Assembly: GCF_033153115.1 (NCBI RefSeq)
Contig: NW_026889751.1
Coordinates: 8,680,001 to 8,744,000, forward strand
From: Saccostrea echinata
Taxonomy: Eukaryota
DNA length: 64,000 nucleotides
Reading direction: 5' to 3'
Shown here: positions 201-26,600 of the stretch, piece by piece
Layout: the number at the start of each line of letters is the position of its first letter
How positions within the stretch are numbered: position 1 is the first letter of the stretch
Made by a program: the position numbers and the translations under genes
The notes under the pieces: generated by a model
Told to the model about the DNA's origin: nothing
Seen by the model: only the letters and a program-made list of their open reading frames with translations
Databases searched by the model: none

Positions 201-3200
201 CCCCAGCCATCGTCGCTGAAGCACCCATTCCTCCTCCTAAAGCTAGCTCACCTGAAACTGGCCGTAAGTAATTTTATCATAACCGAGGTACAAAATTGAT
301 AGAGAAAGTTACAATCACACGAAATGTTGTGGACTAGCTTGAATCGTTAAAATAAACTTGGAACTAATATTTNNNNNNNNNNNNNNNNNNNNNNNNNNNN
401 NNNNNNNNNNNNNNNNNNNNNNNNNNNNNNNNNNNNNNNNNNNNNNNNNNNNNNNNNNNNNNNNNNNNNNNNNNNNNNNNNNNNNNNNNNNNNNNNNNNN
501 NNNAAGTGACTTTTTTTGGGGGGGGGGGGGGGATCTACTTTTTATTTTACAAAACATAAAAAGTAGGGCATCAATATTCTATGTAAGTTAGGTAACGATA
601 TAATTTTATTGAATGAGATGGCAATTGCCGGTAGATTGAATGAATAATAAATATTTCGATGCAGGTAAATGTAAAAAAGAGAAAAAGGTTGTGAGATGTG
701 CAAGCCGTAGATTACAACTCAGTAGTGGTCGACAGAAGGAGATCAAGAAGCTTTGTAGACTGGGGAATACCAGAGAAATTGAAGACGTCAGAGTCCAACT
801 GGTCAAGCAAGATAAAGTGTCTAAACCTTGCATCAACAAAAAGTCGTTTCGCTTACTCAAGAGGAAAGGGAGATGGCATTTGGAAGTTCGCAATGGTTGT
901 CGAGGGAAATTCAAGATCCGATATCGCAGGAAAAGTAAGATTTCAAATAAGTTTATTTCTCATTCTCAGAGAATTTGATTTCCTATATTAATTCCCATGT
1001 TAAGTACATTGTTACTGAGCTTGTCGTAAGATATATGATCCTTTGTTTACGACGTAGATTGCTCCAGAAAATGCGGTCCCAATGCTGTTTGGAAGAAGAG
1101 ACGAAGAGGCAGAGGAGGCAAATGTCGATGCAAGAGAGGTTATCGTGGAAATCCAAAGAAGGGAGGATGTACTGGTAAGATGATTTGTGAGTCTTGAAAC
1201 TTACAATACGATGGAAACAGTTTTTGAAAAAATATGACCAAAATCTATAAACCAAAACAAACTAACAAAAAAAAAATCATTTAAAAAAACAACAGCATAA
1301 AAAGTTCCCATTTTTCATGTGCTAATGAAACTTACATACCGATACTTGTACATGAATTTAGTTGGTAATCTTGACAACTCCTCTTTATTTGCAAATTGAT
1401 ACATTTGTGGGGGAAAAAGTTGACAATATGTTGAGGAACTTGTCAAGATGAAATAATGGATTTTGGATATTGATGACCATGATCCAAATCCCATCTCTCT
1501 GTCCAATTCTCTTTCAGCTTCTTGTGTATGCCGAGCTTCTGGAGACCCACACTATTCTACATATGACGGTCAGAAAATCCACTTCATGGGCACTTGCAAG
1601 TACACGCTGACAAGAACATTGGGAAAGCAACCCTGTGCCTTTAACATCATGGTGTACAACGAAAGACGAAACAACAAGAAATCAGTGTCCTATACCAAAC
1701 AAGTGGATGTGGAAATTGGCAACAACAGAGTTTCACTATTCAAAGGCAAGATATCCCAGGTAGGAACCTTCATGCACATCATTCTTCTTGTGAGTGGTGT
1801 TGCCATGGCCAAATACTAGTATGCGATGAAAACATGTATGATACATGGGTACTTTTTTGTTGGAGGGATTGTCTGATGACAAATGGAACTTGATTGTACC
1901 TGTTGGATTTGTAGGTCAATGAAAGAAATGTAAACATCACACAAATGCCCTTTGAAAAAGATGGCATTTTGTTGACGACTGTAGGGCGCCGTTTCGTCAA
2001 ACTTCAATCACCATCTTGTGGATTGACCGTGCTTTGGGATGGCAAGCATTCTGTGGAAGTTTCTGCCGACAAGGGTAAGTACGGCGGCAAAATGACTGGA
2101 ATCTGTGGGGACTGCAATGGAAAGAGAGATGACTTCCGCTTGGCCAATGGAACAAATGTATCACGATTGCCAGCAAAGGAAAAGTACAGAGAAATCGGAG
2201 ATAGTTATCGCGTGACAGATGCAAAGAGTCCTATATCTGCGTGAGTACGACGTTTAACGTGGTCCGACAGACAAGTTGCGTTCCCTGTATCGTTTGCACG
2301 TGCTATGAAATATCCATGAAAATTGTAAGAGTTGTTGATTTTCAGATGTGGTCCTACACCGGCATTTTCAAGTTGCACTCCGGAACAGACAAAGAGATTC
2401 AGTTCCAATGAAGCTTGTGGATTGATGGAGAGTACATCCGACGAAAATCCATTCAAGGAATGCGTCAAATGGATGAAAACGACTAAAGATGCGGACGGAA
2501 ACAGTCCATTTTCTTCTTGTCTTATTGATGCATGCAACAACGACGGAGCGAAGTTGAAGACAGTGACCTGCCCCGCGCTGGAGGAATTCGAAGAAATATG
2601 TGTAGAGAATGGCTACGCCCCACCAGAGGATAATATCTGGCGAAACATCACTTCCTGTTGTGAGCATTTGTATTTCATACATGTATTTCTCATTGCCTGA
2701 AACTTTACTTTTAACTTCATAAGGGACTAACCCCGATTAATATCTTTTGAGTTGATTTCAATTGCTTCAAGAAATAATAATCGTAAGCATTTATTTAAAG
2801 CATTGGCAGAGGTTGAAAAATGCCATAAAAATGAGGAGTACGTAGAAGATGGAAGTGGATGTCCCAACACATGCCTGTCCCCAAAGGCGGAAGAAACCTG
2901 TTCTGATCCTGATGTTGCAGGGTGTCAGTGTAAGAAAGGTTTTGTGAGAGATGGAGATATCTGCATACCTGTCAGTCAATGTGGATGCACTCTACTGAAG
3001 AAACGCGTTCCTGTACGGCATTACACTATTGTTTTCTTAAGCGATAAAACTTTTATTTGGAGGCAATAAAAATTGATTTTACGCAAGTCTTTTTTACTTT
3101 AAAAAAAATCTTTTCTGTTTTGGATGTTAAAAATAGTTTTGAGAAATGAAGAAAAACCTGAACCCGAGAACAGTAATTTGATAAGGATAAAGAAACATTA

Positions 3201-3420
3201 AATACTTTAGATATTTAGAATAATTTGATTCTATCTGTAGGTTCATAAAATAACACGTTCTCGATATTGTAGGTAAATTCGAGCATACTTTCAGTAGACT
3301 GCAAACAGAGAATTTCATGCACTCTGAGGAACGGTGTTCCAAAAGTTATAGAAGAACCAGCAAAGTGTAGAACTGACGAAATATGTCTGAATCTAAAAGG
3401 AAGAGGGGAATGTAAAAAAG
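201..3420 (+). CDS. Cassette copy 1 (564 aa). Exons: 201-263 Pro linker; 665-934 DUF3011-like; 1058-1174 EGF-like; 1518-1759 and 1915-2240 VWD; 2346-2659 C8; 2801-3012 TIL; 3273-3420 TILa-like
   Basis: Exon lengths 63+270+117+242+326+314+212+148 = 1692 nt. The unit starts and ends in phase 1. The same eight lengths recur in the diverged copy 7, which supports the boundaries. Confidence 0.88.
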
Positions 3421-6400
3421 GTAGTCTATATTCAACGGATTTTTTTCTGCTAAGAATTCGTTTAACGTAATTTCATTAGGCTATTGATGATCTCGTAAAC
3501 GGAATAATAAATAAAGCCTTAAAATTAGAAACTTAAAAGTTGTAGTTTATGTGTATTTGGAGTTCAGGGTTACCACATTTATCTTTATGTAATAACCAGA
3601 TGAACGTTTTATTTTCATTTGTTGCTAAATTTAAAACTAAACACAGTTTACAGACACGATACAGATAATTCCTATTTGAAAATTAGAAAAAAAGTTTTTA
3701 TTGAAAAAAAGCTACAAACCTGATGGGTTACAATTTTGTTAATTGTAAATATGAATTTCACAGCCCCAGCCATCGTCGCTGAAGCACCCATTCCTCCTCC
3801 TAAAGCTAGCTCACCTGAAACTGGCCGTAAGTAATTTTATCATAACCGAGGTACAAAATTGATAGAGAAAGTTACAATCACACGAAATGTTGTGGACTAG
3901 CTTGAATCGTTAAAATAAACTTGGAACTAATATTTNNNNNNNNNNNNNNNNNNNNNNNNNNNNNNNNNNNNNNNNNNNNNNNNNNNNNNNNNNNNNNNNN
4001 NNNNNNNNNNNNNNNNNNNNNNNNNNNNNNNNNNNNNNNNNNNNNNNNNNNNNNNNNNNNNNNNNNNTTTTTTGGGGGGGGGGGGGGATCTACTTTTTAT
4101 TTTACAAAACATAAAAAGTAGGGCATCAATATTCTATGTAAGTTAGGTAACGATATAATTTTATTGAATGAGATGGCAATTGCCGGTAGATTGAATGAAT
4201 AATAAATATTTCGATGCAGGTAAATGTAAAAAAGAGAAAAAGGTTGTGAGATGTGCAAGCCGTAGATTACAACTCAGTAGTGGTCGACAGAAGGAGATCA
4301 AGAAGCTTTGTAGACTGGGGAATACCAGAGAAATTGAAGACGTCAGAGTCCAACTGGTCAAGCAAGATAAAGTGTCTAAACCTTGCATCAACAAAAAGTC
4401 GTTTCGCTTACTCAAGAGGAAAGGGAGATGGCATTTGGAAGTTCGCAATGGTTGTCGAGGGAAATTCAAGATCCGATATCGCAGGAAAAGTAAGATTTCA
4501 AATAAGTTTATTTCTCATTCTCAGAGAATTTGATTTCCTATATTAATTCCCATGTTAAGTACATTGTTACTGAGCTTGTCGTAAGATATATGATCCTTTG
4601 TTTACGACGTAGATTGCTCCAGAAAATGCGGTCCCAATGCTGTTTGGAAGAAGAGACGAAGAGGCAGAGGAGGCAAATGTCGATGCAAGAGAGGTTATCG
4701 TGGAAATCCAAAGAAGGGAGGATGTACTGGTAAGATGATTTGTGAGTCTTGAAACTTACAATACGATGGAAACAGTTTTTGAAAAAATATGACCAAAATC
4801 TATAAACCAAAACAAACTAACAAAAAAAAAATCATTTAAAAAAACAACAGCATAAAAAGTTCCCATTTTTCATGTGCTAATGAAACTTACATACCGATAC
4901 TTGTACATGAATTTAGTTGGTAATCTTGACAACTCCTCTTTATTTGCAAATTGATACATTTGTGGGGGAAAAAGTTGACAATATGTTGAGGAACTTGTCA
5001 AGATGAAATAATGGATTTTGGATATTGATGACCATGATCCAAATCCCATCTCTCTGTCCAATTCTCTTTCAGCTTCTTGTGTATGCCGAGCTTCTGGAGA
5101 CCCACACTATTCTACATATGACGGTCAGAAAATCCACTTCATGGGCACTTGCAAGTACACGCTGACAAGAACATTGGGAAAGCAACCCTGTGCCTTTAAC
5201 ATCATGGTGTACAACGAAAGACGAAACAACAAGAAATCAGTGTCCTATACCAAACAAGTGGATGTGGAAATTGGCAACAACAGAGTTTCACTATTCAAAG
5301 GCAAGATATCCCAGGTAGGAACCTTCATGCACATCATTCTTCTTGTGAGTGGTGTTGCCATGGCCAAATACTAGTATGCGATGAAAACATGTATGATACA
5401 TGGGTACTTTTTTGTTGGAGGGATTGTCTGATGACAAATGGAACTTGATTGTACCTGTTGGATTTGTAGGTCAATGAAAGAAATGTAAACATCACACAAA
5501 TGCCCTTTGAAAAAGATGGCATTTTGTTGACGACTGTAGGGCGCCGTTTCGTCAAACTTCAATCACCATCTTGTGGATTGACCGTGCTTTGGGATGGCAA
5601 GCATTCTGTGGAAGTTTCTGCCGACAAGGGTAAGTACGGCGGCAAAATGACTGGAATCTGTGGGGACTGCAATGGAAAGAGAGATGACTTCCGCTTGGCC
5701 AATGGAACAAATGTATCACGATTGCCAGCAAAGGAAAAGTACAGAGAAATCGGAGATAGTTATCGCGTGACAGATGCAAAGAGTCCTATATCTGCGTGAG
5801 TACGACGTTTAACGTGGTCCGACAGACAAGTTGCGTTCCCTGTATCGTTTGCACGTGCTATGAAATATCCATGAAAATTGTAAGAGTTGTTGATTTTCAG
5901 ATGTGGTCCTACACCGGCATTTTCAAGTTGCACTCCGGAACAGACAAAGAGATTCAGTTCCAATGAAGCTTGTGGATTGATGGAGAGTACATCCGACGAA
6001 AATCCATTCAAGGAATGCGTCAAATGGATGAAAACGACTAAAGATGCGGACGGAAACAGTCCATTTTCTTCTTGTCTTATTGATGCATGCAACAACGACG
6101 GAGCGAAGTTGAAGACAGTGACCTGCCCCGCGCTGGAGGAATTCGAAGAAATATGTGTAGAGAATGGCTATGCCCCACCAGAGGATAATATCTGGCGAAA
6201 CATCACTTCCTGTTGTGAGCATTTGTATTTCATACATGTATTTCTCATTGCCTGAAACTTTACTTTTAACTTCATAAGGGACTAACCCCGATTAATATCT
6301 TTTGAGTTGATTTCAATTGCTTCAAGAAATAATAATCGTAAGCATTTATTTAAAGCATTGACAGAGGTTGAAAAATGCCATAAAAATGAGGAGTACGTAG

Positions 6401-9400
6401 AAGATGGAAGTGGATGTCCCAACACATGCCTGTCCCCAAAGGCGGAAGAAACCTGTTCTGATCCTGATGTTGCAGGGTGTCAGTGTAAGAAAGGTTTTGT
6501 GAGAGATGGAGATATCTGCATACCTGTCAGTCAATGTGGATGCACTCTACTGAAGAAACGCGTTCCTGTACGGCATTACACTATTGTTTTCTTAAGCGAT
6601 AAAACTTTTATTTGGAGGCAATAAAAATTGATTTTACGCAAGTCTTTTTTACTTTAAAAAATATCTTTTCTGTTTTGGATGTTAAAAATAGTTTTGAGAA
6701 ATGAAGAAAAACCTGAACCCGAGAACAGTAATTTGATAAGGATAAAGAAACATTAAATACTTTAGATATTTAGAATAATTTGATTCTATCTGTAGGTTCA
6801 TAAAATAACACGTTCTCGATATTGTAGGTAAATTCGAGCATACTTTCAGTAGACTGCAAACAGAGAATTTCATGCACTCTGAGGAACGGTGTTCCAAAAG
6901 TTATAGAAGAACCAGCAAAGTGTAGAACTGACGAAATATGTCTGAATCTAAAAGGAAGAGGGGAATGTAAAAAAGGTAGTCTATATTCAACGGATTTTTT
7001 TCTGCTAAGAATTCGTTTAACGTAATTTCATTAGGCTATTGATGATCTCGTAAACGGAATAATAAATAAAGCCTTAAAATTAGAAACTTAAAAGTTGTAG
7101 TTTATGTGTATTTGGAGTTCAGGGTTACCACATTTATCTTTATGTAATAACCAGATGAACGTTTTATTTTCATTTGTTGCTAAATTTAAAACTAAACACA
7201 GTTTACAGACACGATACAGATAATTCCTATTTGAAAATTAGAAAAAAAGTTTTTATTGAAAAAAAGCTACAAACCTGATGGGTTACAATTTTGTTAATTG
7301 TAAATATGAATTTCACAGCCCCAGCCATCGTCGCTGAAGCACCCATTCCTCCTCCTAAAGCTAGCTCACCTGAAACTGGCCGTAAGTAATTTTATCATAA
7401 CCGAGGTACAAAATTGATAGAGAAAGTTACAATCACACGAAATGTTGTGGACTAGCTTGAATCGTTAAAATAAACTTGGAACTAATATTTNNNNNNNNNN
7501 NNNNNNNNNNNNNNNNNNNNNNNNNNNNNNNNNNNNNNNNNNNNNNNNNNNNNNNNNNNNNNNNNNNNNNNNNNNNNNNNNNNNNNNNNNNNNNNNNNNN
7601 NNNNNNNNNNNNNNNNNNNNNNNNNNNNTTTTTTTGGGGGGGGGGGATCTACTTTTTATTTTACAAAACATAAAAAGTAGGGCATCAATATTCTATGTAA
7701 GTTAGGTAACGATATAATTTTATTGAATGAGATGGCAATTGCCGGTAGATTGAATGAATAATAAATATTTCGATGCAGGTAAATGTAAAAAAGAGAAAAA
7801 GGTTGTGAGATGTGCAAGCCGTAGATTACAACTCAGTAGTGGTCGACAGAAGGAGATCAAGAAGCTTTGTAGACTGGGGAATACCAGAGAAATTGAAGAC
7901 GTCAGAGTCCAACTGGTCAAGCAAGATAAAGTGTCTAAACCTTGCATCAACAAAAAGTCGTTTCGCTTACTCAAGAGGAAAGGGAGATGGCATTTGGAAG
8001 TTCGCAATGGTTGTCGAGGGAAATTCAAGATCCGATATCGCAGGAAAAGTAAGATTTCAAATAAGTTTATTTCTCATTCTCAGAGAATTTGATTTCCTAT
8101 ATTAATTCCCATGTTAAGTACATTGTTACTGAGCTTGTCGTAAGATATATGATCCTTTGTTTACGACGTAGATTGCTCCAGAAAATGCGGTCCCAATGCT
8201 GTTTGGAAGAAGAGACGAAGAGGCAGAGGAGGCAAATGTCGATGCAAGAGAGGTTATCGTGGAAATCCAAAGAAGGGAGGATGTACTGGTAAGATGATTT
8301 GTGAGTCTTGAAACTTACAATACGATGGAAACAGTTTTTGAAAAAATATGACCAAAATCTATAAACCAAAACAAACTAACAAAAAAAAAATCATTTAAAA
8401 AAACAACAGCATAAAAAGTTCCCATTTTTCATGTGCTAATGAAACTTACATACCGATACTTGTACATGAATTTAGTTGGTAATCTTGACAACTCCTCTTT
8501 ATTTGCAAATTGATACATTTGTGGGGGAAAAAGTTGACAATATGTTGAGGAACTTGTCAAGATGAAATAATGGATTTTGGATATTGATGACCATGATCCA
8601 AATCCCATCTCTCTGTCCAATTCTCTTTCAGCTTCTTGTGTATGCCGAGCTTCTGGAGACCCACACTATTCTACATATGACGGTCAGAAAATCCACTTCA
8701 TGGGCACTTGCAAGTACACGCTGACAAGAACATTGGGAAAGCAACCCTGTGCCTTTAACATCATGGTGTACAACGAAAGACGAAACAACAAGAAATCAGT
8801 GTCCTATACCAAACAAGTGGATGTGGAAATTGGCAACAACAGAGTTTCACTATTCAAAGGCAAGATATCCCAGGTAGGAACCTTCATGCACATCATTCTT
8901 CTTGTGAGTGGTGTTGCCATGGCCAAATACTAGTATGCGATGAAAACATGTATGATACATGGGTACTTTTTTGTTGGAGGGATTGTCTGATGACAAATGG
9001 AACTTGATTGTACCTGTTGGATTTGTAGGTCAATGAAAGAAATGTAAACATCACACAAATGCCCTTTGAAAAAGATGGCATTTTGTTGACGACTGTAGGG
9101 CGCCGTTTCGTCAAACTTCAATCACCATCTTGTGGATTGACCGTGCTTTGGGATGGCAAGCATTCTGTGGAAGTTTCTGCCGACAAGGGTAAGTACGGCG
9201 GCAAAATGACTGGAATCTGTGGGGACTGCAATGGAAAGAGAGATGACTTCCGCTTGGCCAATGGAACAAATGTATCACGATTGCCAGCAAAGGAAAAGTA
9301 CAGAGAAATCGGAGATAGTTATCGCGTGACAGATGCAAAGAGTCCTATATCTGCGTGAGTACGACGTTTAACGTGGTCCGACAGTCAAGTTGCGTTCCCT

Positions 9401-11066: not shown

Positions 11067-11135
<69 letters not shown>

Positions 11136-14100
11136 TTGAATTCCATGAAAGTGACTTTTTTTTTTGGGGGGGGGGGATCTACTTTTTATTTTACAAAACA
11201 TAAAAAGTAGGGCATCAATATTCTATGTAAGTTAGGTAACGATATAATTTTATTGAATGAGATGGCAATTGCCGGTAGATTGAATGAATAATAAATATTT
11301 CGATGCAGGTAAATGTAAAAAAGAGAAAAAGGTTGTGAGATGTGCAAGCCGTAGATTACAACTCAGTAGTGGTCGACAGAAGGAGATCAAGAAGCTTTGT
11401 AGACTGGGGAATACCAGAGAAATTGAAGACGTCAGAGTCCAACTGGTCAAGCAAGATAAAGTGTCTAAACCTTGCATCAACAAAAAGTCGTTTCGCTTAC
11501 TCAAGAGGAAAGGGAGATGGCATTTGGAAGTTCGCAATGGTTGTCGAGGGAAATTCAAGATCCGATATCGCAGGAAAAGTAAGATTTCAAATAAGTTTAT
11601 TTCTCATTCTCAGAGAATTTGATTTCCTATATTAATTCCCATGTTAAGTACATTGTTACTGAGCTTGTCGTAAGATATATGATCCTTTGTTTACGACGTA
11701 GATTGCTCCAGAAAATGCGGTCCCAATGCTGTTTGGAAGAAGAGACGAAGAGGCAGAGGAGGCAAATGTCGATGCAAGAGAGGTTATCGTGGAAATCCAA
11801 AGAAGGGAGGATGTACTGGTAAGATGATTTGTGAGTCTTGAAACTTACAATACGATGGAAACAGTTTTTGAAAAAATATGACCAAAATCTATAAACCAAA
11901 ACAAACTAACAAAAAAAAAATCATTTAAAAAAACAACAGCATAAAAAGTTCCCATTTTTCATGTGCTAATGAAACTTACATACCGATACTTGTACATGAA
12001 TTTAGTTGGTAATCTTGACAACTCCTCTTTATTTGCAAATTGATACATTTGTGGGGGAAAAAGTTGACAATATGTTGAGGAACTTGTCAAGATGAAATAA
12101 TGGATTTTGGATATTGATGACCATGATCCAAATCCCATCTCTCTGTCCAATTCTCTTTCAGCTTCTTGTGTATGCCGAGCTTCTGGAGACCCACACTATT
12201 CTACATATGACGGTCAGAAAATCCACTTCATGGGCACTTGCAAGTACACGCTGACAAGAACATTGGGAAAGCAACCCTGTGCCTTTAACATCATGGTGTA
12301 CAACGAAAGACGAAACAACAAGAAATCAGTGTCCTATACCAAACAAGTGGATGTGGAAATTGGCAACAACAGAGTTTCACTATTCAAAGGCAAGATATCC
12401 CAGGTAGGAACCTTCATGCACATCATTCTTCTTGTGAGTGGTGTTGCCATGGCCAAATACTAGTATGCGATGAAAACATGTATGATACATGGGTACTTTT
12501 TTGTTGGAGGGATTGTCTGATGACAAATGGAACTTGATTGTACCCGTTGGATTTGTAGGTCAATGAAAGAAATGTAAACATCACACAAATGCCCTTTGAA
12601 AAAGATGGCATTTTGTTGACGACTGTAGGGCGCCGTTTCGTCAAACTTCAATCACCATCTTGTGGATTGACCGTGCTTTGGGATGGCAAGCATTCTGTGG
12701 AAGTTTCTGCCGACAAGGGTAAGTACGGCGGCAAAATGACTGGAATCTGTGGGGACTGCAATGGAAAGAGAGATGACTTCCGCTTGGCCAATGGAACAAA
12801 TGTATCACGATTGCCAGCAAAGGAAAAGTACAGAGAAATCGGAGATAGTTATCGCGTGACAGATGCAAAGAGTCCTATATCTGCGTGAGTACGACGTTTA
12901 ACGTGGTCCGACAGTCAAGTTGCGTTCCCTGTATCGTTTGCACGTGCTATGAAATATCCATGAAAATTGTAAGAGTTGTTGATTTTCAGATGTGGTCCTA
13001 CACCGGCATTTTCAAGTTGCACTCCGGAACAGACAAAGAGATTCAGTTCCAATGAAGCTTGTGGATTGATGGAGAGTACATCCGACGAAAATCCATTCAA
13101 GGAATGCGTCAAATGGATGAAAACGACTAAAGATGCGGACGGAAACAGTCCATTTTCTTCTTGTCTTATTGATGCATGCAACAACGACGGAGCGAAGTTG
13201 AAGACAGTGACCTGCCCCGCGCTGGAGGAATTCGAAGAAATATGTGTAGAGAATGGCTATGCCCCACCAGAGGATAATATCTGGCGAAACATCACTTCCT
13301 GTTGTGAGCATTTGTATTTCATACATGTATTTCTCATTGCCTGAAACTTTACTTTTAACTTCATAAGGGACTAACCCCGATTAATATCTTTTGAGTTGAT
13401 TTCAATTGCTTCAAGAAATAATAATCGTAAGCATTTATTTAAAGCATTGACAGAGGTTGAAAAATGCCATAAAAATGAGGAGTACGTAGAAGATGGAAGT
13501 GGATGTCCCAACACATGCCTGTCCCCAAAGGCGGAAGAAACCTGTTCTGATCCTGATGTTGCAGGGTGTCAGTGTAAGAAAGGTTTTGTGAGAGATGGAG
13601 ATATCTGCATACCTGTCAGTCAATGTGGATGCACTCTACTGAAGAAACGCGTTCCTGTACGGCATTACACTATTGTTTTCTTAAGCGATAAAACTTTTAT
13701 TTGGAGGCAATAAAAATTGATTTTACGCAAGTCTTTTTTACTTTAAAAAAATCTTTTCTGTTTTGGATGTTAAAAATAGTTTTGAGAAATGAAGAAAAAC
13801 CTGAACCCGAGAACAGTAATTTGATAAGGATAAAGAAACATTAAATACTTTAGATATTTAGAATAATTTGATTCTATCTGTAGGTTCATAAAATAACACG
13901 TTCTCGATATTGTAGGTAAATTCGAGCATACTTTCAGTAGACTGCAAACAGAGAATTTCATGCACTCTGAGGAACGGTGTTCCAAAAGTTATAGAAGAAC
14001 CAGCAAAGTGTAGAACTGACGAAATATGTCTGAATCTAAAAGGAAGAGGGGAATGTAAAAAAGGTAGTCTATATTCAACGGATTTTTTTCTGCTAAGAAT

Positions 14101-14596: not shown

Positions 14597-14681
<85 letters not shown>

Positions 14682-17600
14682 TTGAATTCCATGAAAGTGA
14701 CTTTTTTTTGGGGGGGGGGGATCTACTTTTTATTTTACAAAACATAAAAAGTAGGGCATCAATATTCTATGTAAGTTAGGTAACGATATAATTTTATTGA
14801 ATGAGATGGCAATTGCCGGTAGATTGAATGAATAATAAATATTTCGATGCAGGTAAATGTAAAAAAGAGAAAAAGGTTGTGAGATGTGCAAGCCGTAGAT
14901 TACAACTCAGTAGTGGTCGACAGAAGGAGATCAAGAAGCTTTGTAGACTGGGGAATACCAGAGAAATTGAAGACGTCAGAGTCCAACTGGTCAAGCAAGA
15001 TAAAGTGTCTAAACCTTGCATCAACAAAAAGTCGTTTCGCTTACTCAAGAGGAAAGGGAGATGGCATTTGGAAGTTCGCAATGGTTGTCGAGGGAAATTC
15101 AAGATCCGATATCGCAGGAAAAGTAAGATTTCAAATAAGTTTATTTCTCATTCTCAGAGAATTTGATTTCCTATATTAATTCCCATGTTAAGTACATTGT
15201 TACTGAGCTTGTCGTAAGATATATGATCCTTTGTTTACGACGTAGATTGCTCCAGAAAATGCGGTCCCAATGCTGTTTGGAAGAAGAGACGAAGAGGCAG
15301 AGGAGGCAAATGTCGATGCAAGAGAGGTTATCGTGGAAATCCAAAGAAGGGAGGATGTACTGGTAAGATGATTTGTGAGTCTTGAAACTTACAATACGAT
15401 GGAAACAGTTTTTGAAAAAATATGACCAAAATCTATAAACCAAAACAAACTAACAAAAAAAAATCATTTAAAAAAACAACAGCATAAAAAGTTCCCATTT
15501 TTCATGTGCTAATGAAACTTACATACCGATACTTGTACATGAATTTAGTTGGTAATCTTGACAACTCCTCTTTATTTGCAAATTGATACATTTGTGGGGG
15601 AAAAAGTTGACAATATGTTGAGGAACTTGTCAAGATGAAATAATGGATTTTGGATATTGATGACCATGATCCAAATCCCATCTCTCTGTCCAATTCTCTT
15701 TCAGCTTCTTGTGTATGCCGAGCTTCTGGAGACCCACACTATTCTACATATGACGGTCAGAAAATCCACTTCATGGGCACTTGCAAGTACACGCTGACAA
15801 GAACATTGGGAAAGCAACCCTGTGCCTTTAACATCATGGTGTACAACGAAAGACGAAACAACAAGAAATCAGTGTCCTATACCAAACAAGTGGATGTGGA
15901 AATTGGCAACAACAGAGTTTCACTATTCAAAGGCAAGATATCCCAGGTAGGAACCTTCATGCACATCATTCTTCTTGTGAGTGGTGTTGCCATGGCCAAA
16001 TACTAGTATGCGATGAAAACATGTATGATACATGGGTACTTTTTTGTTGGAGGGATTGTCTGTTGACAAATGGAACTTGATTGTACCCGTTGGATTTGTA
16101 GGTCAATGAAAGAAATGTAAACATCACACAAATGCCCTTTGAAAAAGATGGCATTTTGTTGACGACTGTAGGGCGCCGTTTCGTCAAACTTCAATCACCA
16201 TCTTGTGGATTGACCGTGCTTTGGGATGGCAAGCATTCTGTGGAAGTTTCTGCCGACAAGGGTAAGTACGGCGGCAAAATGACTGGAATCTGTGGGGACT
16301 GCAATGGAAAGAGAGATGACTTCCGCTTGGCCAATGGAACAAATGTATCACGATTGCCAGCAAAGGAAAAGTACAGAGAAATCGGAGATAGTTATCGCGT
16401 GACAGATGCAAAGAGTCCTATATCTGCGTGAGTACGACGTTTAACGTGGTCCGACAGTCAAGTTGCGTTCCCTGTATCGTTTGCACGTGCTATGAAATAT
16501 CCATGAAAATTGTAAGAGTTGTTGATTTTCAGATGTGGTCCTACACCGGCATTTTCAAGTTGCACTCCGGAACAGACAAAGAGATTCAGTTCCAATGAAG
16601 CTTGTGGATTGATGGAGAGTACATCCGACGAAAATCCATTCAAGGAATGCGTCAAATGGATAAAAACGACTAAAGATGCGGACGGAAACAGTCCATTTTC
16701 TTCTTGTCTTATTGATGCATGCAACAACGACGGAGCGAAGTTGAAGACAGTGACCTGCCCCGCGCTGGAGGAATTCGAAGAAATATGTGTAGAGAATGGC
16801 TATGCCCCACCAGAGGATAATATCTGGCGAAACATCACTTCCTGTTGTGAGCATTTGTATTTCATACATGTATTTCTCATTGCCTGAAACTTTACTTTTA
16901 ACTTCATAAGGGACTAACCCCGATTAATATCTTTTGAGTTGATTTCAATTGCTTCAAGAAATAATAATCGTAAGCATTTATTTAAAGCATTGACAGAGGT
17001 TGAAAAATGCCATAAAAATGAGGAGTACGTAGAAGATGGAAGTGGATGTCCCAACACATGCCTGTCCCCAAAGGCGGAAGAAACCTGTTCTGATCCTGAT
17101 GTTGCAGGGTGTCAGTGTAAGAAAGGTTTTGTGAGAGATGGAGATATCTGCATACCTGTCAGTCAATGTGGATGCACTCTACTGAAGAAACGCGTTCCTG
17201 TACGGCATTACACTATTGTTTTCTTAAGCGATAAAACTTTTATTTGGAGGCAATAAAAATTGATTTTACGCAAGTCTTTTTTACTTTAAAAAATATCTTT
17301 TCTGTTTTGGATGTTAAAAATAGTTTTGAGAAATGAAGAAAAACCTGAACCCGAGAACAGTAATTTGATAAGGATAAAGAAACATTAAATACTTTAGATA
17401 TTTAGAATAATTTGATTCTATCTGTAGGTTCATAAAATAACACGTTCTCGATATTGTAGGTAAATTCGAGCATACTTTCAGTAGACTGCAAACAGAGAAT
17501 TTCATGCACTCTGAGGAACGGTGTTCCAAAAGTTATAGAAGAACCAGCAAAGTGTAGAACTGACGAAATATGTTTGAATCTAAAAGGAAGAGGGGAATGT

Positions 17601-20600
17601 AAAAAAGGTAGTCTATATTCAACGGATTTTTTTCTGCTAAGAATTCGTTTAACGTAATTTCATTAGGCTATTGATGATCTCGTAAATGGAATAATAAATA
17701 AAGCCTTAAAATTAGAAACTTAAAAGTTGTAGTTTATGTGTATTTGGAGTTCAGGGTTACCACATTTATCTTTATGTAATAACCAGATGAACGTTTTATT
17801 TTCATTTGTTGCTAAATTTAAAACTAAACACAGTGTACAGACACGATACAGATAATTCCTATTTGAAAATTAGAAAAAAAGTTTTTATTGAAAAAAAGCT
17901 ACAAACCTGATGGGTTACAATTTTGTTAATTGTAAATATGAATTTCACAGCCCCAGCCATCGTCGCTGAAGCACCCATTCCTCCTCCTAAAGCTAGCTCA
18001 CCTGAAACTGGCCGTAAGTAATTTTATCATAACCGAGGTACAAAATTGATAGAGAAAGTTACAATCACACGAAATGTTGTGGACTAGCTTGAATCGTTAA
18101 AATAAACTTGGAACTAATATTTNNNNNNNNNNNNNNNNNNNNNNNNNNNNNNNNNNNNNNNNNNNNNNNNNNNNNNNNNNNNNNNNNNNNNNNNNNNNNN
18201 NNNNNNNNNNNNNNNNNNNNNNNNNNNNNNNNNNNNNNNNNNNNNNNNNNNNNNNNNNNNNNNNNNNNNNNNNNNNNNNNNNNNNNNNNTTTTACAAAAC
18301 ATAAAAAGTAGGGCATCAATATTCTATGTAAGTTAGGTAACGATATAATTTTATTGAATGAGATGGCAATTGCCGGTAGATTGAATGAATAATAAATATT
18401 TCGATGCAGGTAAATGTAAAAAAGAGAAAAAGGTTGTGAGATGTGCAAGCCGTAGATTACAACTCAGTAGTGGTCGACAGAAGGAGATCAAGAAGCTTTG
18501 TAGACTGGGGAATACCAGAGAAATTGAAGACGTCAGAGTCCAACTGGTCAAGCAAGATAAAGTGTCTAAACCTTGCATCAACAAAAAGTCGTTTCGCTTA
18601 CTCAAGAGGAAAGGGAGATGGCATTTGGAAGTTCGCAATGGTTGTCGAGGGAAATTCAAGATCCGATATCGCAGGAAAAGTAAGATTTCAAATAAGTTTA
18701 TTTCTCATTCTCAGAGAATTTGATTTCCTATATTAATTCCCATGTTAAGTACATTGTTACTGAGCTTGTCGTAAGATATATGATCCTTTGTTTACGACGT
18801 AGATTGCTCCAGAAAATGCGGTCCCAATGCTGTTTGGAAGAAGAGACGAAGAGGCAGAGGAGGCAAATGTCGATGCAAGAGAGGTTATCGTGGAAATCCA
18901 AAGAAGGGAGGATGTACTGGTAAGATGATTTGTGAGTCTTGAAACTTACAATACGATGGAAACAGTTTTTGAAAAAATATGACCAAAATCTATAAACCAA
19001 AACAAACTAACAAAAAAAAAATCATTTAAAAAAACAACAGCATAAAAAGTTCCCATTTTTCATGTGCTAATGAAACTTACATACCGATACTTGTACATGA
19101 ATTTAGTTGGTAATCTTGACAACTCCTCTTTATTTGCAAATTGATACATTTGTGGGGGAAAAAGTTGACAATATGTTGAGGAACTTGTCAAGATGAAATA
19201 ATGGATTTTGGATATTGATGACCATGATCCAAATCCCATCTCTCTGTCCAATTCTCTTTCAGCTTCTTGTGTATGCCGAGCTTCTGGAGACCCACACTAT
19301 TCTACATATGACGGTCAGAAAATCCACTTCATGGGCACTTGCAAGTACACGCTGACAAGAACATTGGGAAAGCAACCCTGTGCCTTTAACATCATGGTGT
19401 ACAACGAAAGACGAAACAACAAGAAATCAGTGTCCTATACCAAACAAGTGGATGTGGAAATTGGCAACAACAGAGTTTCACTATTCAAAGGCAAGATATC
19501 CCAGGTAGGAACCTTCATGCACATCATTCTTCTTGTGAGTGGTGTTGCCATGGCCAAATACTAGTATGCGATGAAAACATGTATGATACATGGGTACTTT
19601 TTTGTTGGAGGGATTGTCTGATGACAAATGGAACTTGATTGTACCCGTTGGATTTGTAGGTCAATGAAAGAAATGTAAACATCACACAAATGCCCTTTGA
19701 AAAAGATGGCATTTTGTTGACGACTGTAGGGCGCCGTTTCGTCAAACTTCAATCACCATCTTGTGGATTGACCGTGCTTTGGGATGGCAAGCATTCTGTG
19801 GAAGTTTCTGCCGACAAGGGTAAGTACGGCGGCAAAATGACTGGAATCTGTGGGGACTGCAATGGAAAGAGAGATGACTTCCGCTTGGCCAATGGAACAA
19901 ATGTATCACGATTGCCAGCAAAGGAAAAGTACAGAGAAATCGGAGATAGTTATCGCGTGACAGATGCAAAGAGTCCTATATCTGCGTGAGTACGACGTTT
20001 AACGTGGTCCGACAGTCAAGTTGCGTTCCCTGTATCGTTTGCACGTGCTATGAAATATCCATGAAAATTGTAAGAGTTGTTGATTTTCAGATGTGGTCCT
20101 ACACCGGCATTTTCAAGTTGCACTCCGGAACAGACAAAGAGATTCAGTTCCAATGAAGCTTGTGGATTGATGGAGAGTACATCCGACGAAAATCCATTCA
20201 AGGAATGCGTCAAATGGATGAAAACGACTAAAGATGCGGACGGAAACAGTCCATTTTCTTCTTGTCTTATTGATGCATGCAACAACGACGGAGCGAAGTT
20301 GAAGACAGTGACCTGCCCCGCGCTGGAGGAATTCGAAGAAATATGTGTAGAGAATGGCTATGCCCCACCAGAGGATAATATCTGGCGAAACATCACTTCC
20401 TGTTGTGAGCATTTGTATTTCATACATGTATTTCTCATTGCCTGAAACTTTACTTTTAACTTCATAAGGGACTAACCCCGATTAATATCTTTTGAGTTGA
20501 TTTCAATTGCTTCAAGAAATAATAATCGTAAGCATTTATTTAAAGCATTGACAGAGGTTGAAAAATGCCATAAAAATGAGGAGTACGTAGAAGATGGAAG

Positions 20601-23600: not shown

Positions 23601-26600
23601 TAGAGCGAAAAAAAATTCTCGTTTGGAAAAATTCTACGCAAAGTGTTTTCTATAAGGATGAAATTTTATTGAATGAGATGATAATTGCTAGTAGGTAGAG
23701 TAATGTAATAATTTCGTTTCAGGTAAATGTAAAGAGGAGAGAAAAGTAATTCGGTGTGCAAGCCGTACTTTGCAGCTCAGAAGTGGACGAGAGAAAGATA
23801 TCAAGAAACTTTGCAGACTGGGAATCACCAGAAAAGTCGAAGACTTAGGAGTCCAATTGGTCAAACAAGACAAAGTGTCTAAACCTTGTATCAACAAGAA
23901 GTCATTCCGCTTACTCCGGAGGAAAGGGAAATGGCATTTGGAAGTTCGCAATGGTTGTCAAGGGAAATTCAAGATCCGATATCGAAAGAAAAGTGAGACC
24001 CTTTTTTTACTGTATTACCCATGCTTTGGTACCAGGTTGTGTTCTTTTTCGTAATTTTTTTTTTGAAGTTTTATTTCTCCGTTTGTTTATTTGATCCATA
24101 CTTAACGTAGACTGTAACAGAAAGTGTGGACCCAATGCAATATGGAGAAAAAATCGAAGAGGTAGAGGAGGCAAGTGTCGATGCAAGAGAGGCTATCGTG
24201 GAAATCCAAAGAAGGGAGGATGTACTGGTAAGATGTTTTCATAAATCTTGAAAATTTGATTTAAAAAACATCCTCAATGTTGTTGCTCAGAGGAAATTTC
24301 AAACATTATTTTTTTTGGTCTCTAAATACTACCTTTAGAAACTGTAGCGCTTCTCTTTTTCGTATTGTCTGTTTTTTTTCTATTCAGCTTCCTGTTTGTG
24401 TCGAGCTTCCGGAGACCCGCACTATTCAACATTCGATGGACAGAAAATCCATTTCATGGGCACATGCAAGTACACACTAACAAAAACGCTTGGTAAACAA
24501 CTATGTGCCTTCAACGTGATGGTGTACAATGAGAGACGGTACAATAAGAAATCTGTCTCCTATACCAAGCAGGTAGACGTCGAAATTGGCAGTACCTACG
24601 TTTCGTTATTCAAAGGCAAGGAAACAAAGGTAGTAACAATTCAAACACTCAATGAGGGAAAGGGAATCACAGACTTTATAAGGAATCAGTCCTCTTTTAA
24701 TCGATTGGGGTCATAATAAAGTGCACATGGATTTTTATGCGTTCATTTATTTTTATCCCCTGTTTTAGACATTTGCGACTCTTTTGTGCCTTTTGCAATT
24801 GTAGGTCAATGGAAGAGATATAAACGTTAGTAAAATGCCCTTTGAAAAAGATGGCATTTTACTTACGACGATAGGGCGCCGTTTCGTGAAACTCCAGTCA
24901 AAGTCTTGTGGATTGACGGTGCTTTGGGATGGCAAGCATTCTGTGGAGGTGACAGCCGACAAGAGAAGTTACGGTGGCAGGATGACTGGTATCTGTGGAG
25001 ACTGCAATGGAAAGAGGGATGACTTCCGTTTGGCCAATGGTACCAATGTATCACGATTGCCAGCAAAAGACAAGTACATAGAAATCGGAGATAGTTACCG
25101 TGTGACAGATGCTCAGAGTCCTTTATCTGTGTGAGTATTAGATGGAACGAGTATTCTCGGACCTCTTTTATTCAAAACTTAAAAGCTGATTTTGTTACAT
25201 GCTCAACTTGCAAACATGCAAGTCGCTTTTATGCTAGACATTCTTGAGGATATTTCGAACATCAAGATATAATTTTGTTTTCAATTGATTATTTTACATA
25301 TTAAATGTTTTAGAACATATGTTATTTACATTTTGTTTGGTTTTGCTGACAATTATAAATCATAATCTTGATTTTGTGTTCAGATATACTACATGTAGTA
25401 AATGTTTCAAGAACAGTTCTGGACTGATTGTCGGCACATTTATCTGAATGCGAGAAAACTGATTTTTAACAAGGCATTACCTCCCGACAGTGTTGACTGG
25501 TTTTTTTTTATTATAAACACTAACTCTTACAATTGTCGGTCCTATTTTCATTCAGTGGCTATTTCCTTTTGTGTTTTCTAGGTGCGGTCCCACGCCGGAA
25601 TTTTTAAGTTGCACTCCTGAGCAAAGTAAGAGGCTTAGCTCTCAAGAAAATTGTGGACTGATGGCGAGCACGTCCATCGAAAACCCATTCAAAGTATGCG
25701 TAGAGTGGATGAAGAAAACAGTGGAAGCGGACGGAAATAGCCCCTTTTCTTCCTGTCTCATTGATGCCTGCAATAACGACGGCACTCGACTGAAGAGCGT
25801 GACTTGCCCTGCACTAGAAGAATTCGAAGAAGTATGTGTAGAGAACGGTTATCCTCCACCAGAACAGAATAATTGGAGAAATATAACCTCTTGTCGTAAG
25901 TAATTTTTGCATTGATAAATTTTGAATCAGTTGATATAATTTCATTTAATGATAAAGGAAAAATAAACTTGAACAAATTAAATTTTGAACGTTATTTTTA
26001 AATAAGTAGATCATAAGCAGCTATACTACCTAAACTTTGCTTGAAGTTGACAATTTTCTGTTTAAATTTCTATTTAAAACGAATACATCGTACACTGATT
26101 ATAATATCAGCCTCTTTTATTATCTTAGAAAATCATATACAGATATTTTCTTTTGTAGCATTAACAGAACCCGAAAAATGCAAAGATAATGAGGTGTATT
26201 TGGAGGATGGAAGTGGTTGTCCCAACACTTGCCTGTCCCCAAAAGCGGAAGAAACCTGTTCTGATCGTGATATTGCAGGGTGTCAGTGTAAGAAAGGTTT
26301 TGTGAGAGATGGAGATTTTTGCATTCCTATTAGTCAATGTGGATGTGTCCTATTTAATAAACATTTCCCGGTAAGTTGATCTGTTTACACTCTTTTTAAG
26401 AAAGCAACCTATCAGGATATTTGCAGAAAAAGTATCACATTTGAGATAAATTGTAATACTTTTCTTTACGCATACAAAATGCGTGATGGAGTTCATATAC
26501 ACATTTGGTGGAATGCAAAATAAAAGTAACTAAATCTTGAGAAAGTTGTCCAGTAGTAGTAGAGCCCTTCTGAATATTTCAGATTTATCTGACAAGAATA

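What the first reader, a model, noticed from the sequence alone, without database searches (positions are those of the whole stretch)
665..934. Extremely basic DUF3011/ADEL-lectin-like domain on a symmetric exon inside a VWD protein
Seen: a 90-aa phase 1-1 exon with the pattern C-A-S...C...V-x-L-V-K-Q...S-K-P-C...S-F...L-E-V-R-N-G-C-R-G-K-F-K-I-R-Y, with about 34 K/R against 7 D/E. Recognised by eye as resembling DUF3011 (C-x-S...C...L-x-x-Q-x-S...C...W-V-x-x-G-C-R-x-x-F), a family I recall from bacteria and from molluscan egg lectins of the ADEL type. It is absent from VWD assemblies 8 and 9, which suggests gain or loss by exon shuffling. Inferred roles: binding glycans, polyanions or microbial surfaces.
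Basis: partly seen in the sequence, partly recalled or inferred. Interest (0 to 1): 0.75.

Follow-up and report, generated by a model that had tools for sequence, protein, structure and literature searches.

The report
Hyper-basic DUF3011-like lectin exon, repeated tenfold
A 270-base exon, repeated ten times inside a giant secreted oyster mucin/zonadhesin-like gene, encodes a very positively charged, distant relative of the sugar-binding domain of sea-hare egg lectins, and probably acts as a multivalent binder of negatively charged sugars or surfaces.

Summary
Window 665-934 (+) is a 270-nt phase 1-1 exon.

It is one of 10 copies in a single gene. Eight are identical in protein, inside a 3.56-kb tandem unit that is 99.2-100% identical including introns. 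Each unit has 8 exons (564 codons): Pro linker, this domain, a basic EGF-like exon, VWD with GDPH, C8, TIL and an E module.

Spliced RNA contigs from two runs, about 94% identical to the window, include the exon with GT..AG borders. The three diverged copies give dN/dS of 0.11-0.15.

- **Homology to DUF3011 is well supported but remote.**
  - Pfam's only hit is PF11218, at 17.2 bits against a cut-off of 25.
  - A profile of the three diverged copies found 6 proteins among 1.84 billion. One is a canonical DUF3011 protein (E 2e-5; hhalign 94%).
  - The four cysteines align with canonical DUF3011 exons of the same genome, which are also phase 1-1.
- **The fold could not be tested.** No solved DUF3011 structure was found.
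- **Binding of polyanions or acidic glycans is inferred, not shown.**

I class it as a new variant of a known kind. The scan had already noted the first copy, upstream of this window.

The parts
665..934 (+). The finding: a 270-nt phase 1-1 exon encoding the basic DUF3011-like domain (array unit 3 of the gene, first copy in the window).
   Evidence: Splice sites and open frame. Only Pfam hit is PF11218. The equivalent copy at 11309-11578 is spliced in RNA contigs.
4220..4489 (+). Identical copy of the exon (100% nt).
   Evidence: blastn; profile hit.
7779..8048 (+). Identical copy of the exon (100% nt).
11309..11578 (+). Identical copy of the exon. This is the copy on which RNA contigs were laid.
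   Evidence: In one search the joint 11578->11702 is GT..AG in both X1 and X2.
14853..15122 (+). Identical copy of the exon.
18410..18679 (+). Identical copy of the exon.
23723..23992 (+). Diverged last copy (85% nt, 82% aa; net charge +23).
201..263 (+). Pro-rich linker exon (APAIVAEAPIPPPKASSPETG), phase 1-1, upstream of the domain exon.
   Evidence: Sequence. The RNA contig joins the linker to the domain exon. The same order is seen in P0001.
1058..1174 (+). Basic EGF-like exon, phase 1-1, with 15 K/R and 0 D/E. It has 5 Cys, with Trp where EGF Cys3 would be.
   Evidence: Weak EGF_3 Pfam hit, E 0.03. Composition. RNA joint. Compared with the 6-Cys EGF of assembly 8.
1518..1759 (+). VWD exon 1, with the GDPH motif.
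   Evidence: Pfam VWD 60.5 bits; RNA joints.
1915..2240 (+). VWD exon 2.
   Evidence: Pfam VWD 37.8 bits; RNA joints.
2346..2659 (+). C8 exon (acidic, pI 4.4).
   Evidence: Pfam C8 29.5 bits.
2801..3012 (+). TIL exon (acidic, pI 4.5).
   Evidence: Pfam TIL 40.8 bits.
3273..3420 (+). Cys-rich 'E' exon that closes the unit. No Pfam hit.
29430..34361 (+). VWD assembly 8 (ordinary 6-Cys EGF, then VWD, C8, TIL, E). It has no DUF3011-like exon.
37091..44219 (+). A run of about 12 EGF-like exons, then VWD assembly 9 and a Cys-rich terminal exon (43884-44219). No DUF3011-like exon.

Best explanation
The exon encodes one repeat of a divergent, strongly cationic subfamily of the DUF3011 (PF11218) domain. 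DUF3011 is the repeat that makes up the galacturonic-acid-binding egg lectins AKL and ADEL of Aplysia. The domain is predicted to be an eight-stranded all-beta module held by the family's four conserved cysteines. It sits as a class 1-1 cassette exon at the head of each of ten units. Each unit runs: domain, basic EGF-like exon, VWD (GDPH), C8, TIL, E, Pro linker. The gene product is a secreted protein of very roughly 7,000 residues (my estimate from 10 units of 564 codons plus the 3' part), which NCBI calls 'zonadhesin-like' in a related oyster. SHOWN: the exon is real, spliced and under purifying selection; it occurs 10 times in one gene; it is remotely homologous to DUF3011; and the high positive charge is kept across the whole subfamily (net +13 to +26, against 0 to +7 for canonical oyster DUF3011 exons). 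INFERRED: (a) the domain keeps a lectin-like binding role; (b) its charge directs it to polyanionic ligands such as uronic-acid or sulfated polysaccharides or microbial surfaces; (c) ten copies on one D-assembly scaffold give avidity, so the protein works as a multivalent agglutinin or gel cross-linker. I put homology to DUF3011 at about 0.85-0.9, and the polyanion/acidic-glycan binding mechanism at about 0.4-0.5. The confidence given for this explanation (0.55) is for the two taken together.
For: Homology to DUF3011:
- PF11218 is the only Pfam hit of the exon (E 0.005, 17.2 bits), of the 82% copy (16.6 bits) and of the 70% copy (16.5 bits).
- It is also the top hit of 3 of the 4 outside subfamily members tested: P0002 20.4 bits, P0005 18.7, P0004 14.8.
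- The Pfam model has 197 positions and the exon matches positions 68-128, which is one of several repeats. Canonical single-repeat exons of the same genome score only 24.8-38.9 bits.
- A profile of the three copies searched against 1,835,955,588 proteins gave 6 hits at E<=0.001. Five are the same subfamily. The sixth, P0006 (E 2.1e-5, 2 stretches), is a canonical DUF3011 protein with 86.9 Pfam bits.
- hhalign of subfamily alignment A2 against P0006: probability 94.1%, E 1.3e-7, 47% identity over 43 columns. Against the genome's own canonical exons: 64.3%, E 6.4e-5.
- C11, C30, C55, C78, G80 and Y86 are invariant across basic and canonical exons.
- Against a small profile of the canonical oyster exons, the real exon ranks 5th of 5001 among full shuffles and 6th of 5001 among shuffles that keep the cysteines in place.
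- In the ESM Atlas the three best clusters are all DUF3011 (0.86, 0.84, 0.83; 190 of 256 features shared). With PF11218 excluded there was no usable hit.

Fold: AF2 model has pLDDT 91.2 and pTM 0.78, all beta. Its strand order matches the model of a canonical exon. 22 of the 50 listed PDB neighbours are shared between the two models, often with the same chain ranges (my hand count).

Reality of the exon: RNA contigs join it to its neighbouring exons. dN/dS is 0.11-0.15.

Genomic context: a canonical DUF3011 exon (35.5 bits) follows VWD-C8-TIL-E exons on contig C9 of the same genome. That run of exons ends in a terminal exon homologous to the one in this gene, E 9e-9.

Function precedent: AKL binds galacturonic acid, and ADEL agglutinates S. 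aureus (PMC5484111 and PMC8306185, passages read).

Charge is conserved across the subfamily.
Against: - All Pfam scores of the basic subfamily are below the 25-bit gathering cut-off.
- P0003 gave no Pfam hit at E<=1. P0001, which carries a truncated copy, showed no DUF3011 row at E<=1.
- The whole-genome scan with PF11218 did not return the window's copies.
- hhalign covers only the C-terminal half. Against the oyster canonical exons it reaches only 64%.
- The Atlas scores are under 0.9 and recognition is low (1566). The tool states that a third of shuffled proteins get a first hit of 0.8 or more.
- The G-x-(S/T)-(Y/F)-G and I-W-V motifs of canonical members are altered here (KKSFR; W-HLE-V).
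No sugar-binding residues are known for the family.
- The RNA contigs are about 94% identical to the window, so they come from a related source rather than demonstrably from this genome. Contigs cannot show rare exon-skipping isoforms.
Confidence: 0.55

Rival explanations
1. The domain is a DUF3011 homologue but no longer a lectin. It acts as an electrostatic module. The very basic domain plus basic EGF-like exon (48 K/R in 127 residues) would pair with the acidic C8 and TIL modules (pI 4.4-4.5), or with acidic matrix, mineral or mucin partners. That would condense, package or glue the protein, in the manner of a coacervate or adhesive, with no sugar specificity.
For: Basic and acidic modules alternate within each unit. 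The canonical motif positions G-x-S-Y-G and I-W-V are altered. Charge is the trait conserved down to 35-46% identity.
Against: Purifying selection acts on the whole exon, not only on charge (dN/dS 0.11-0.15). The cysteine framework and a confidently folded model are kept. A pure charge carrier would not need a conserved fold. There are no expression or localisation data.
Confidence: 0.3
2. The resemblance to DUF3011 is convergent or chance. On this view the exon encodes an unrelated small Cys-rich basic beta domain.
For: All Pfam scores are sub-threshold. The profile-profile match covers only about 40 columns. The Atlas evidence is weak by the tool's own calibration.
Against: The only non-subfamily hit among 1.84 billion proteins is a canonical DUF3011 protein (E 2.1e-5). 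No other family appears in Pfam or in the Atlas. Shuffles that keep the cysteines fixed still rank the real sequence 6th of 5001. The exon phase is the same as in canonical exons, and so is the placement after a VWD-C8-TIL-E block.
Confidence: 0.1
3. The basic runs mainly serve as proprotein-convertase sites (for example RYRR|K at the end of the domain, and KKRRRGR in the EGF-like exon). These would cut the polyprotein into units of about 564 residues or release basic peptides.
For: R-x-(K/R)-R-like strings are present in every copy. GDPH motifs suggest the protein is processed anyway.
Against: The strings lie in predicted strands of a confident fold (E78-88). RYRRK is not kept in distant subfamily members, which have TYQEK or TYEKK. 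No cleavage data exist.
Confidence: 0.1
4. The exon is a pseudo-exon or an assembly artefact that is not part of the mature mRNA.
For: The units are 99.2-100% identical, and 4 of the unit junctions carry N runs, so the copy number may be mis-assembled.
Against: Spliced contigs from 2 of 2 runs contain the exon with GT..AG borders, and one contig runs once round the 1692-nt unit. NCBI's model of a related oyster contains it. dN/dS is 0.11-0.15.
Confidence: 0.02

Closest known systems
AKL / ADEL, galacturonic-acid-binding egg lectins of Aplysia (DUF3011 family; PMC5484111, PMC8306185)
   Same: Molluscan and secreted. Built of DUF3011-type repeats of roughly 65-90 residues with conserved cysteines. 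By profile evidence the window's domain belongs to the same superfamily.
   Different: AKL is a free protein of about 218 residues with three tandem repeats, and it is not notably basic as far as the passages I read say. Here a single repeat per unit is embedded in a VWD-C8-TIL polyprotein, repeated 10 times, with net charge +26. It has longer hairpins (18 residues between Cys1 and Cys2, against 9-10 in canonical exons).
Bacterial DUF3011 proteins (PF11218), for example P0006
   Same: They share the C-x-S...C...L-x-K-Q-x-x-S-x-x-C...S-F...W...V-x-N-G-C-R-x-x-F-x-I-x-Y framework. Identity is 47% over the C-terminal 43 columns.
   Different: P0006 scores 86.9 Pfam bits with two or more repeats. 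The window's exon scores 17.2 bits, carries insertions, and has lost the glycines of G-x-S-F-G.
Canonical DUF3011 exons of the same genome (C9:45678272-45678577, C9:45796904-45797161, C9:45634954-45635160, C29:33913274-33913534)
   Same: Single-repeat, phase 1-1 exons in mosaic extracellular genes. One follows a VWD-C8-TIL-E block and lies in a run of exons whose terminal exon is homologous to this gene's. All four cysteines are invariant.
   Different: They score at or above the Pfam cut-off (24.8-38.9 bits) and have net charge 0 to +7. They are followed by Kringle exons. They carry an extra Cys in the last strand (V-C-Y) where the window's domain has Arg.
D-assembly proteins: zonadhesin, FCGBP and gel-forming mucins (VWD-C8-TIL-E repeats with GDPH)
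   Same: The scaffold of each unit has VWD, C8 and TIL above the Pfam cut-offs, plus a GDPH motif. The relative's protein is named 'zonadhesin-like' by NCBI.
   Different: From my own knowledge, these vertebrate proteins have no DUF3011-like or hyper-basic module between their D assemblies. Here every one of ten assemblies is preceded by one.

Membership tests
DUF3011 (Pfam PF11218) | Score at or above Pfam's gathering cut-off (25 bits). | tested here: not met
   17.2 bits; 16.6 and 16.5 for the diverged copies; 14.8-20.4 for outside relatives and no hit for P0003. The model spans several repeats, and canonical single-repeat exons reach only 24.8-38.9 bits.
DUF3011 (Pfam PF11218) | Significant profile-level homology to accepted members. 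| tested here: met
   The profile of 3 copies hits canonical P0006 at E 2.1e-5 among 1.84 billion proteins. hhalign gives 94.1%, E 1.3e-7, and 64.3%, E 6.4e-5 against the oyster canonical exons.
   C11, C30, C55, C78, G80 and Y86 are invariant in alignment A4 of 9 basic and canonical sequences.
DUF3011 (Pfam PF11218) | Conserved G-x-(S/T)-(Y/F)-G and I-W-V segments between Cys3 and Cys4. | tested here: inconclusive
   S-F and W...V are kept, but the glycines are replaced (KKSFR) and W and V are separated by HLE.
DUF3011 (Pfam PF11218) | Same three-dimensional fold as a family member. | tested here: inconclusive
   No solved member was found (Foldseek found none at E<=0.001). The AF2 models of the basic exon (pLDDT 91) and of a canonical exon (pLDDT 75) have the same strand order and share 22 of 50 listed PDB neighbours. 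Model coordinates could not be superposed here.
AKL/ADEL-type lectins | Binding of galacturonic acid or galactose; haemagglutination. | not testable with these tools
   Only known from the literature (PMC5484111, PMC8306185). No binding-site residues are defined.
AKL/ADEL-type lectins | Three tandem DUF3011 repeats in a free polypeptide of about 218-230 aa. | tested here: not met
   There is one repeat per 564-codon unit, flanked by a linker exon and an EGF-like exon.
VWD-C8-TIL D-assembly proteins (host gene) | VWD, C8 and TIL domains in order, above the Pfam cut-offs, with a GDPH motif. | tested here: met
   VWD 60.5 and 37.8 bits, C8 29.5, TIL 40.8. 'SGDPHY' is in the VWD exon.

The most novel reading that the evidence does not exclude
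The hyper-basic DUF3011 repeat and the neighbouring EGF-like exon form one disulfide-clamped polycationic module. The EGF-like exon has lost Cys3 to Trp, and the domain keeps an orphan N-terminal Cys. Present ten times on a GDPH-cleaving D-assembly scaffold, this module would make a new kind of lectin-mucin hybrid. Such a protein would be a giant secreted polycation that captures uronic-acid-rich or sulfated polysaccharides (algal, biofilm or bacterial capsule) or cross-links acidic matrix. It could serve in oyster mucosal defence, particle capture or adhesion.
Probability: 0.2. Interest if true: 0.7.

Novelty: new variant of a known kind. Interest (0 to 1): 0.45.

Why it matters
DUF3011 is a poorly understood family. 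Its only characterised members are small Aplysia egg lectins, and no solved structure was found here. This locus adds three things.

- The repeat also exists as a shuffled class 1-1 exon inside large mosaic extracellular proteins of an oyster.
- A whole cationic subfamily lies below Pfam's cut-off, so it goes unannotated. NCBI's name for the orthologue is just 'zonadhesin-like'.
- Multivalency can be reached by repeating a D-assembly unit ten times, rather than by tandem lectin repeats.

The locus offers a concrete, expressible 90-residue domain for testing what DUF3011 binds. It is also a clear case of concerted evolution: array units with introns 99-100% identical, flanked by old diverged end copies.

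Tried and rejected
1. Sequence searches of the PDB gave no relevant match. I searched with the exon, with its profile, with a canonical oyster exon, with canonical P0006 and with the joint profile A4. The only rows were CFA/I fimbrial subunits at E 0.01-0.32 for the canonical exon, with no stretch passing on its own.

3. A possible relic of the exon lies at 35771-35845 (profile E 0.024, 'LNLRNGDAGKLKIRFH'). It was not supported at DNA level: local alignment score 26, against up to 35 for 55 control chunks.

4. The whole-genome scan with PF11218 missed the window's own copies.

5. The shuffle test against the small canonical profile gave only p of about 0.001.

The genomic context and organisms of P0002-P0005 therefore stayed unknown, and the taxonomic range of the basic subfamily is not established.

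7. The proprotein-convertase and pseudo-exon readings were considered and ranked low (see the rival explanations).

8. I made no comparison with the AKL/ADEL sequences themselves, because none was on hand. Figures and supplements of the papers were not seen; Figure 4 of PMC5484111 (the alignment) might bear on motif conservation.

The proposed inter-domain disulfide between the domain and the EGF-like exon is therefore untested.

Literature: a search for 'DUF3011' found 4 papers. I read passages of three of them: PMC5484111, PMC8878817 and PMC8306185. PMC13027682 I saw only in the listing. None of the passages read describes a DUF3011 domain inside a VWD protein. A search for 'zonadhesin' + 'oyster' + 'VWD' found 2 papers. 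I read passages of the bioRxiv preprint 10.64898/2026.05.15.723513, which did not bear on this gene. PMC9275260 I saw in the listing only.
Full report
**Observation.**
The stretch 665-934 (+) is bounded by an acceptor AG (663-664) and a donor GT (935-936). Frame 667-933 is open and reads KCKKEKKVVRCASRRLQLSSGRQKEIKKLCRLGNTREIEDVRVQLVKQDKVSKPCINKKSFRLLKRKGRWHLEVRNGCRGKFKIRYRRK. The other two frames carry stops. The exon is 270 nt and phase 1 at both ends. It has 33 K/R, 7 D/E and 5 Cys in 89 full codons, pI 11.2.

**The exon is one of ten copies.**
- A protein search of the window's own genome (G000; the window is C2:8680001-8744000) found 10 matches from 11 candidates, all in one array. Eight are 100% identical in protein, one is 82% and one is 70%.
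- In the window the copies start at 665, 4220, 7779, 11309, 14853 and 18410 (100% identical DNA) and at 23723 (85%).
- The whole unit of about 3,556 bp, introns included, is 99.2-100% identical between copies.
- The flanking copies are old: dS is 0.64 and 1.33 to the core. The core has therefore been homogenised or recently amplified.
- N runs sit at the same place in 4 unit junctions. I left them alone. The copy number therefore depends on the assembly.

**Unit anatomy.**

| Exon | Window coordinates | Phase | Pfam result |
|---|---|---|---|
| Pro linker | 201-263 | 1-1 | none |
| This domain | 665-934 | 1-1 | PF11218, 17.2 bits |
| Basic EGF-like | 1058-1174 | 1-1 | EGF_3, E 0.03 only |
| VWD, exon 1 (SGDPHY) | 1518-1759 | 1-0 | VWD, 60.5 bits |
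| VWD, exon 2 | 1915-2240 | 0-2 | VWD, 37.8 bits |
| C8 | 2346-2659 | 2-1 | C8, 29.5 bits |
| TIL | 2801-3012 | 1-0 | TIL, 40.8 bits |
| Cys-rich E | 3273-3420 | 0-1 | none |

The coordinates come from reading the sequence together with the RNA joints. The exon lengths sum to 1692 nt, or 564 codons.

The rest of the gene:
- A candidate signal-peptide exon (MERRHFLPYVLGIIVLGLLEFSISA, with a GTGAGT donor in phase 1) lies about 790 bp before the first, 70%-identical copy. No unit-like exon was found in the 30 kb upstream of that copy. This 5' end is inferred, with no RNA support.
- After unit 10 comes assembly 8, with an ordinary acidic 6-Cys EGF and no DUF3011-like exon.
- Then follow about 12 EGF-like exons, assembly 9 and a terminal Cys-rich exon ending at 44219.
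- A profile of the exon against all 2063 six-frame ORFs of the window found the 7 copies and nothing else better than E 0.024.

**Is the exon expressed and constrained?**
One search for sequencing runs returned two runs with a small share of words. Laid on window 10300-15300, both hold spliced contigs.
- X1 (kind 'RNA?', a guess by the tool) has one 1722-nt contig. It joins E, linker, 11304-11578, 11702-11816, both VWD exons, C8 and TIL, and then 'goes back 3271'. That is, it runs once round the unit with a period of 1692 nt.
- X2 (an RNA-Seq library) has a 405-nt contig that joins 11321-11578 to 11702-11816.
- The joint 11578->11702 is GT..AG in both runs.
- The contigs differ from the window at about 6% of letters (16 of 275 in the domain exon). 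They therefore come from a related source, and they cannot exclude rare skipped isoforms.
- P0001, which NCBI names 'zonadhesin-like [Saccostrea cucullata]', has the same order of modules.
- dN/dS among the three diverged copies is 0.11-0.15.

**Relation to DUF3011: evidence for.**
- PF11218 is the only Pfam hit of the exon (E 0.005, 17.2 bits) and of both diverged copies (16.6 and 16.5 bits).
- The match covers positions 68-128 of a 197-position, multi-repeat model. Bona fide single-repeat DUF3011 exons elsewhere in this genome (contigs C9 and C29) reach only 24.8-38.9 bits.
- A profile of the three copies, with no canonical sequence in it, was scored against 1,835,955,588 proteins. Six reached E<=0.001.
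  - P0001 is the orthologue.
  - P0002-P0005 are the same basic subfamily at 35-59% identity. They come from unnamed contigs.
  - P0006 reached E 2.1e-5 with two stretches. P0006 is a canonical DUF3011 protein (86.9 Pfam bits).
- hhalign of the 8-row subfamily alignment against P0006 gives 94.1%, E 1.3e-7, 47% identity over 43 columns. Against the four canonical oyster exons it gives 64.3%, E 6.4e-5.
- In a joint alignment the four cysteines, G80 and Y86 are invariant.
- Against the small canonical profile, the real exon ranks 5th of 5001 among full shuffles and 6th of 5001 among shuffles with the cysteines fixed.
- The three best clusters in the ESM Atlas are all DUF3011 (0.86, 0.84, 0.83). 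With that family excluded nothing usable remains. The tool itself rates scores under 0.9 and this recognition value as weak evidence.

**Relation to DUF3011: evidence against.**
- Every Pfam score of the subfamily is below the cut-off.
- P0003, and P0001 with its truncated copy, showed no DUF3011 row at E<=1.
- The genome scan with PF11218 did not return the window's copies.
- The profile-profile match covers only the C-terminal half.
- The G-x-S-(Y/F)-G and I-W-V segments are altered.

**Fold.**
AlphaFold2 on the 8-row alignment gives pLDDT 91.2 and pTM 0.78, with eight strands. No solved relative was found.
- Foldseek found 0 matches at E<=0.001.
- Sequence searches of the PDB with canonical members were also blank.
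- A model of a canonical oyster exon (pLDDT 75.1) has the same strand order, minus one hairpin.
- That model shares 22 of its 50 listed neighbours with the basic model, often over the same chain ranges (my hand count).

This agrees with a common fold but does not prove it. I could not superpose the two models.

**Context and origin.**
- The canonical exons on C9 are also phase 1-1.
- One of them (35.5 bits) lies on the same strand just after WSC, EGF, VWD, C8, TIL and E exons, and before two Kringle exons (83.4 and 78.8 bits) and a terminal exon. That terminal exon is homologous to the window's terminal exon (E 9e-9).
- So a VWD-C8-TIL-E block followed by DUF3011 already exists in canonical form in a likely paralogue. 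The basic exon is most simply a diverged derivative of that arrangement, later multiplied with its unit.
- A joint profile found 15 matches in the genome (a lower bound): the 10 basic copies, all in this one gene, and 5 canonical-type exons.

**Mechanism.**
The high charge is a kept trait of the subfamily. Net charge is +13 to +26 in all 8 rows of A2, against 0 to +7 in the 4 canonical oyster exons. The homogenised core copy is the most basic. The next exon is basic as well (15 K/R, 0 D/E), while C8 and TIL are acidic.

The only characterised DUF3011 proteins bind an acidic sugar, galacturonic acid, and ADEL agglutinates S. aureus (PMC5484111 and PMC8306185, passages read). My best reading is a lectin-like module tuned to polyanionic ligands, made multivalent by ten copies on a D-assembly scaffold. 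This is inference; I put it at 0.4-0.5. The main rival, at about 0.3, is a purely electrostatic role in condensation or adhesion.

One structural detail is only partly tested. Canonical oyster exons carry an extra N-terminal Cys and an extra Cys in the last strand (V-C-Y). The basic domain keeps the first of these but has Arg at the second position. The adjacent EGF-like exon has Trp where assembly 8's EGF has its third Cys. That leaves one orphan Cys in each module, so an inter-domain disulfide is possible. I did not fold the joined exons.

**Comparison and verdict.**
The domain works, as far as can be inferred, like a DUF3011 lectin repeat. As for membership, it fails Pfam's operational cut-off. 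It meets the profile-homology and cysteine-framework tests. The fold test is inconclusive and the binding test was not possible.

It is not an AKL-type lectin in architecture: it has one repeat per unit, embedded in a mosaic protein. I class it as a new variant of a known kind, namely a cationic, sub-threshold DUF3011 subfamily used as a repeated cassette in a zonadhesin-like polyprotein. Interest is moderate at 0.45. It would be useful to specialists in mollusc lectins and mucins, and as an entry point to what DUF3011 does, but it is not a new principle. The scan's first readers had already noted the upstream first copy (s1-805464) and the repeating module (s1-805428).

Noticed in passing
G000:C9:45675775-45686706 (- strand; loci L019, L020, L002): A run of same-strand exons: WSC, EGF, VWD, C8, TIL, E/EGF_3, canonical DUF3011 (35.5 bits), two Kringles, and a terminal Cys-rich exon homologous to window 43884-44219 (E 9e-9). 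It is probably a paralogous mosaic gene that carries the canonical form of the domain after a D assembly.
   Followed up: partly
G000:C9:45795136-45805941 (- strand; loci L021, L022, L001): Many WSC-domain exon pairs, followed by a canonical DUF3011 exon (38.9 bits), two Kringle-like exons and a similar terminal exon. This looks like another mosaic gene using the same cassette. Only the DUF3011 exon was scanned against Pfam; I named the WSC and Kringle exons here by eye.
   Followed up: partly
window 1-21249 and G000:C2:8672000-8680000: Eight array units of about 3,556 bp are 99.2-100% identical including introns, while the end units differ by dS 0.64-1.33. This points to concerted evolution or very recent amplification. 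N runs (373-503, 3936-4067, 7491-7628, 18123-18289) sit at the same place in 4 junctions, next to a poly-G tract, so the copy number may be uncertain.
   Followed up: partly
window 1058-1174 (and each copy): The EGF-like exon has 5 Cys, with Trp where assembly 8's EGF (about 29430-29540) has Cys3, and a KKRRRGRGGK loop. Together with the domain's orphan N-terminal Cys, this suggests an inter-domain disulfide.
   Followed up: partly
G000:C2:8669202-8669277 (upstream of the window): Candidate first exon: MERRHFLPYVLGIIVLGLLEFSISA, followed by a GTGAGT donor in phase 1, with a TATATAAG about 35 bp upstream of the ATG. If real, the mature protein would begin directly with the first (70%) copy of the basic domain. 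No RNA evidence.
   Followed up: partly
window 35771-35845 (+): A short ORF reads RTMFVSRNVLNLRNGDAGKLKIRFH and resembles the domain's last strand (profile E 0.024). It lies between assembly 8 and the EGF run, and might be a decayed relic of the exon. It is not supported at DNA level (score 26, against controls up to 35).
   Followed up: yes
window 37091-41722 (+): About 12 tandem EGF-like exons (for example KCIDSDCPTNAECSNNKCTCKTGFIDVMGTCES) lie between VWD assemblies 8 and 9. I read these by eye and did not scan them against Pfam.
   Followed up: no
window 1518-1560 and each unit: Every VWD exon carries SGDPHY. From my own knowledge this is the GDPH autocatalytic cleavage motif of MUC2, FCGBP and zonadhesin-type D domains. 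The polyprotein may therefore be cut once per unit, leaving the basic module at the C-terminal end of each fragment.
   Followed up: no
G000:C29:11122348-11122572 (-): A further weak DUF3011-like exon (E 2.7e-4 with the joint profile A4). I did not examine it.
   Followed up: no
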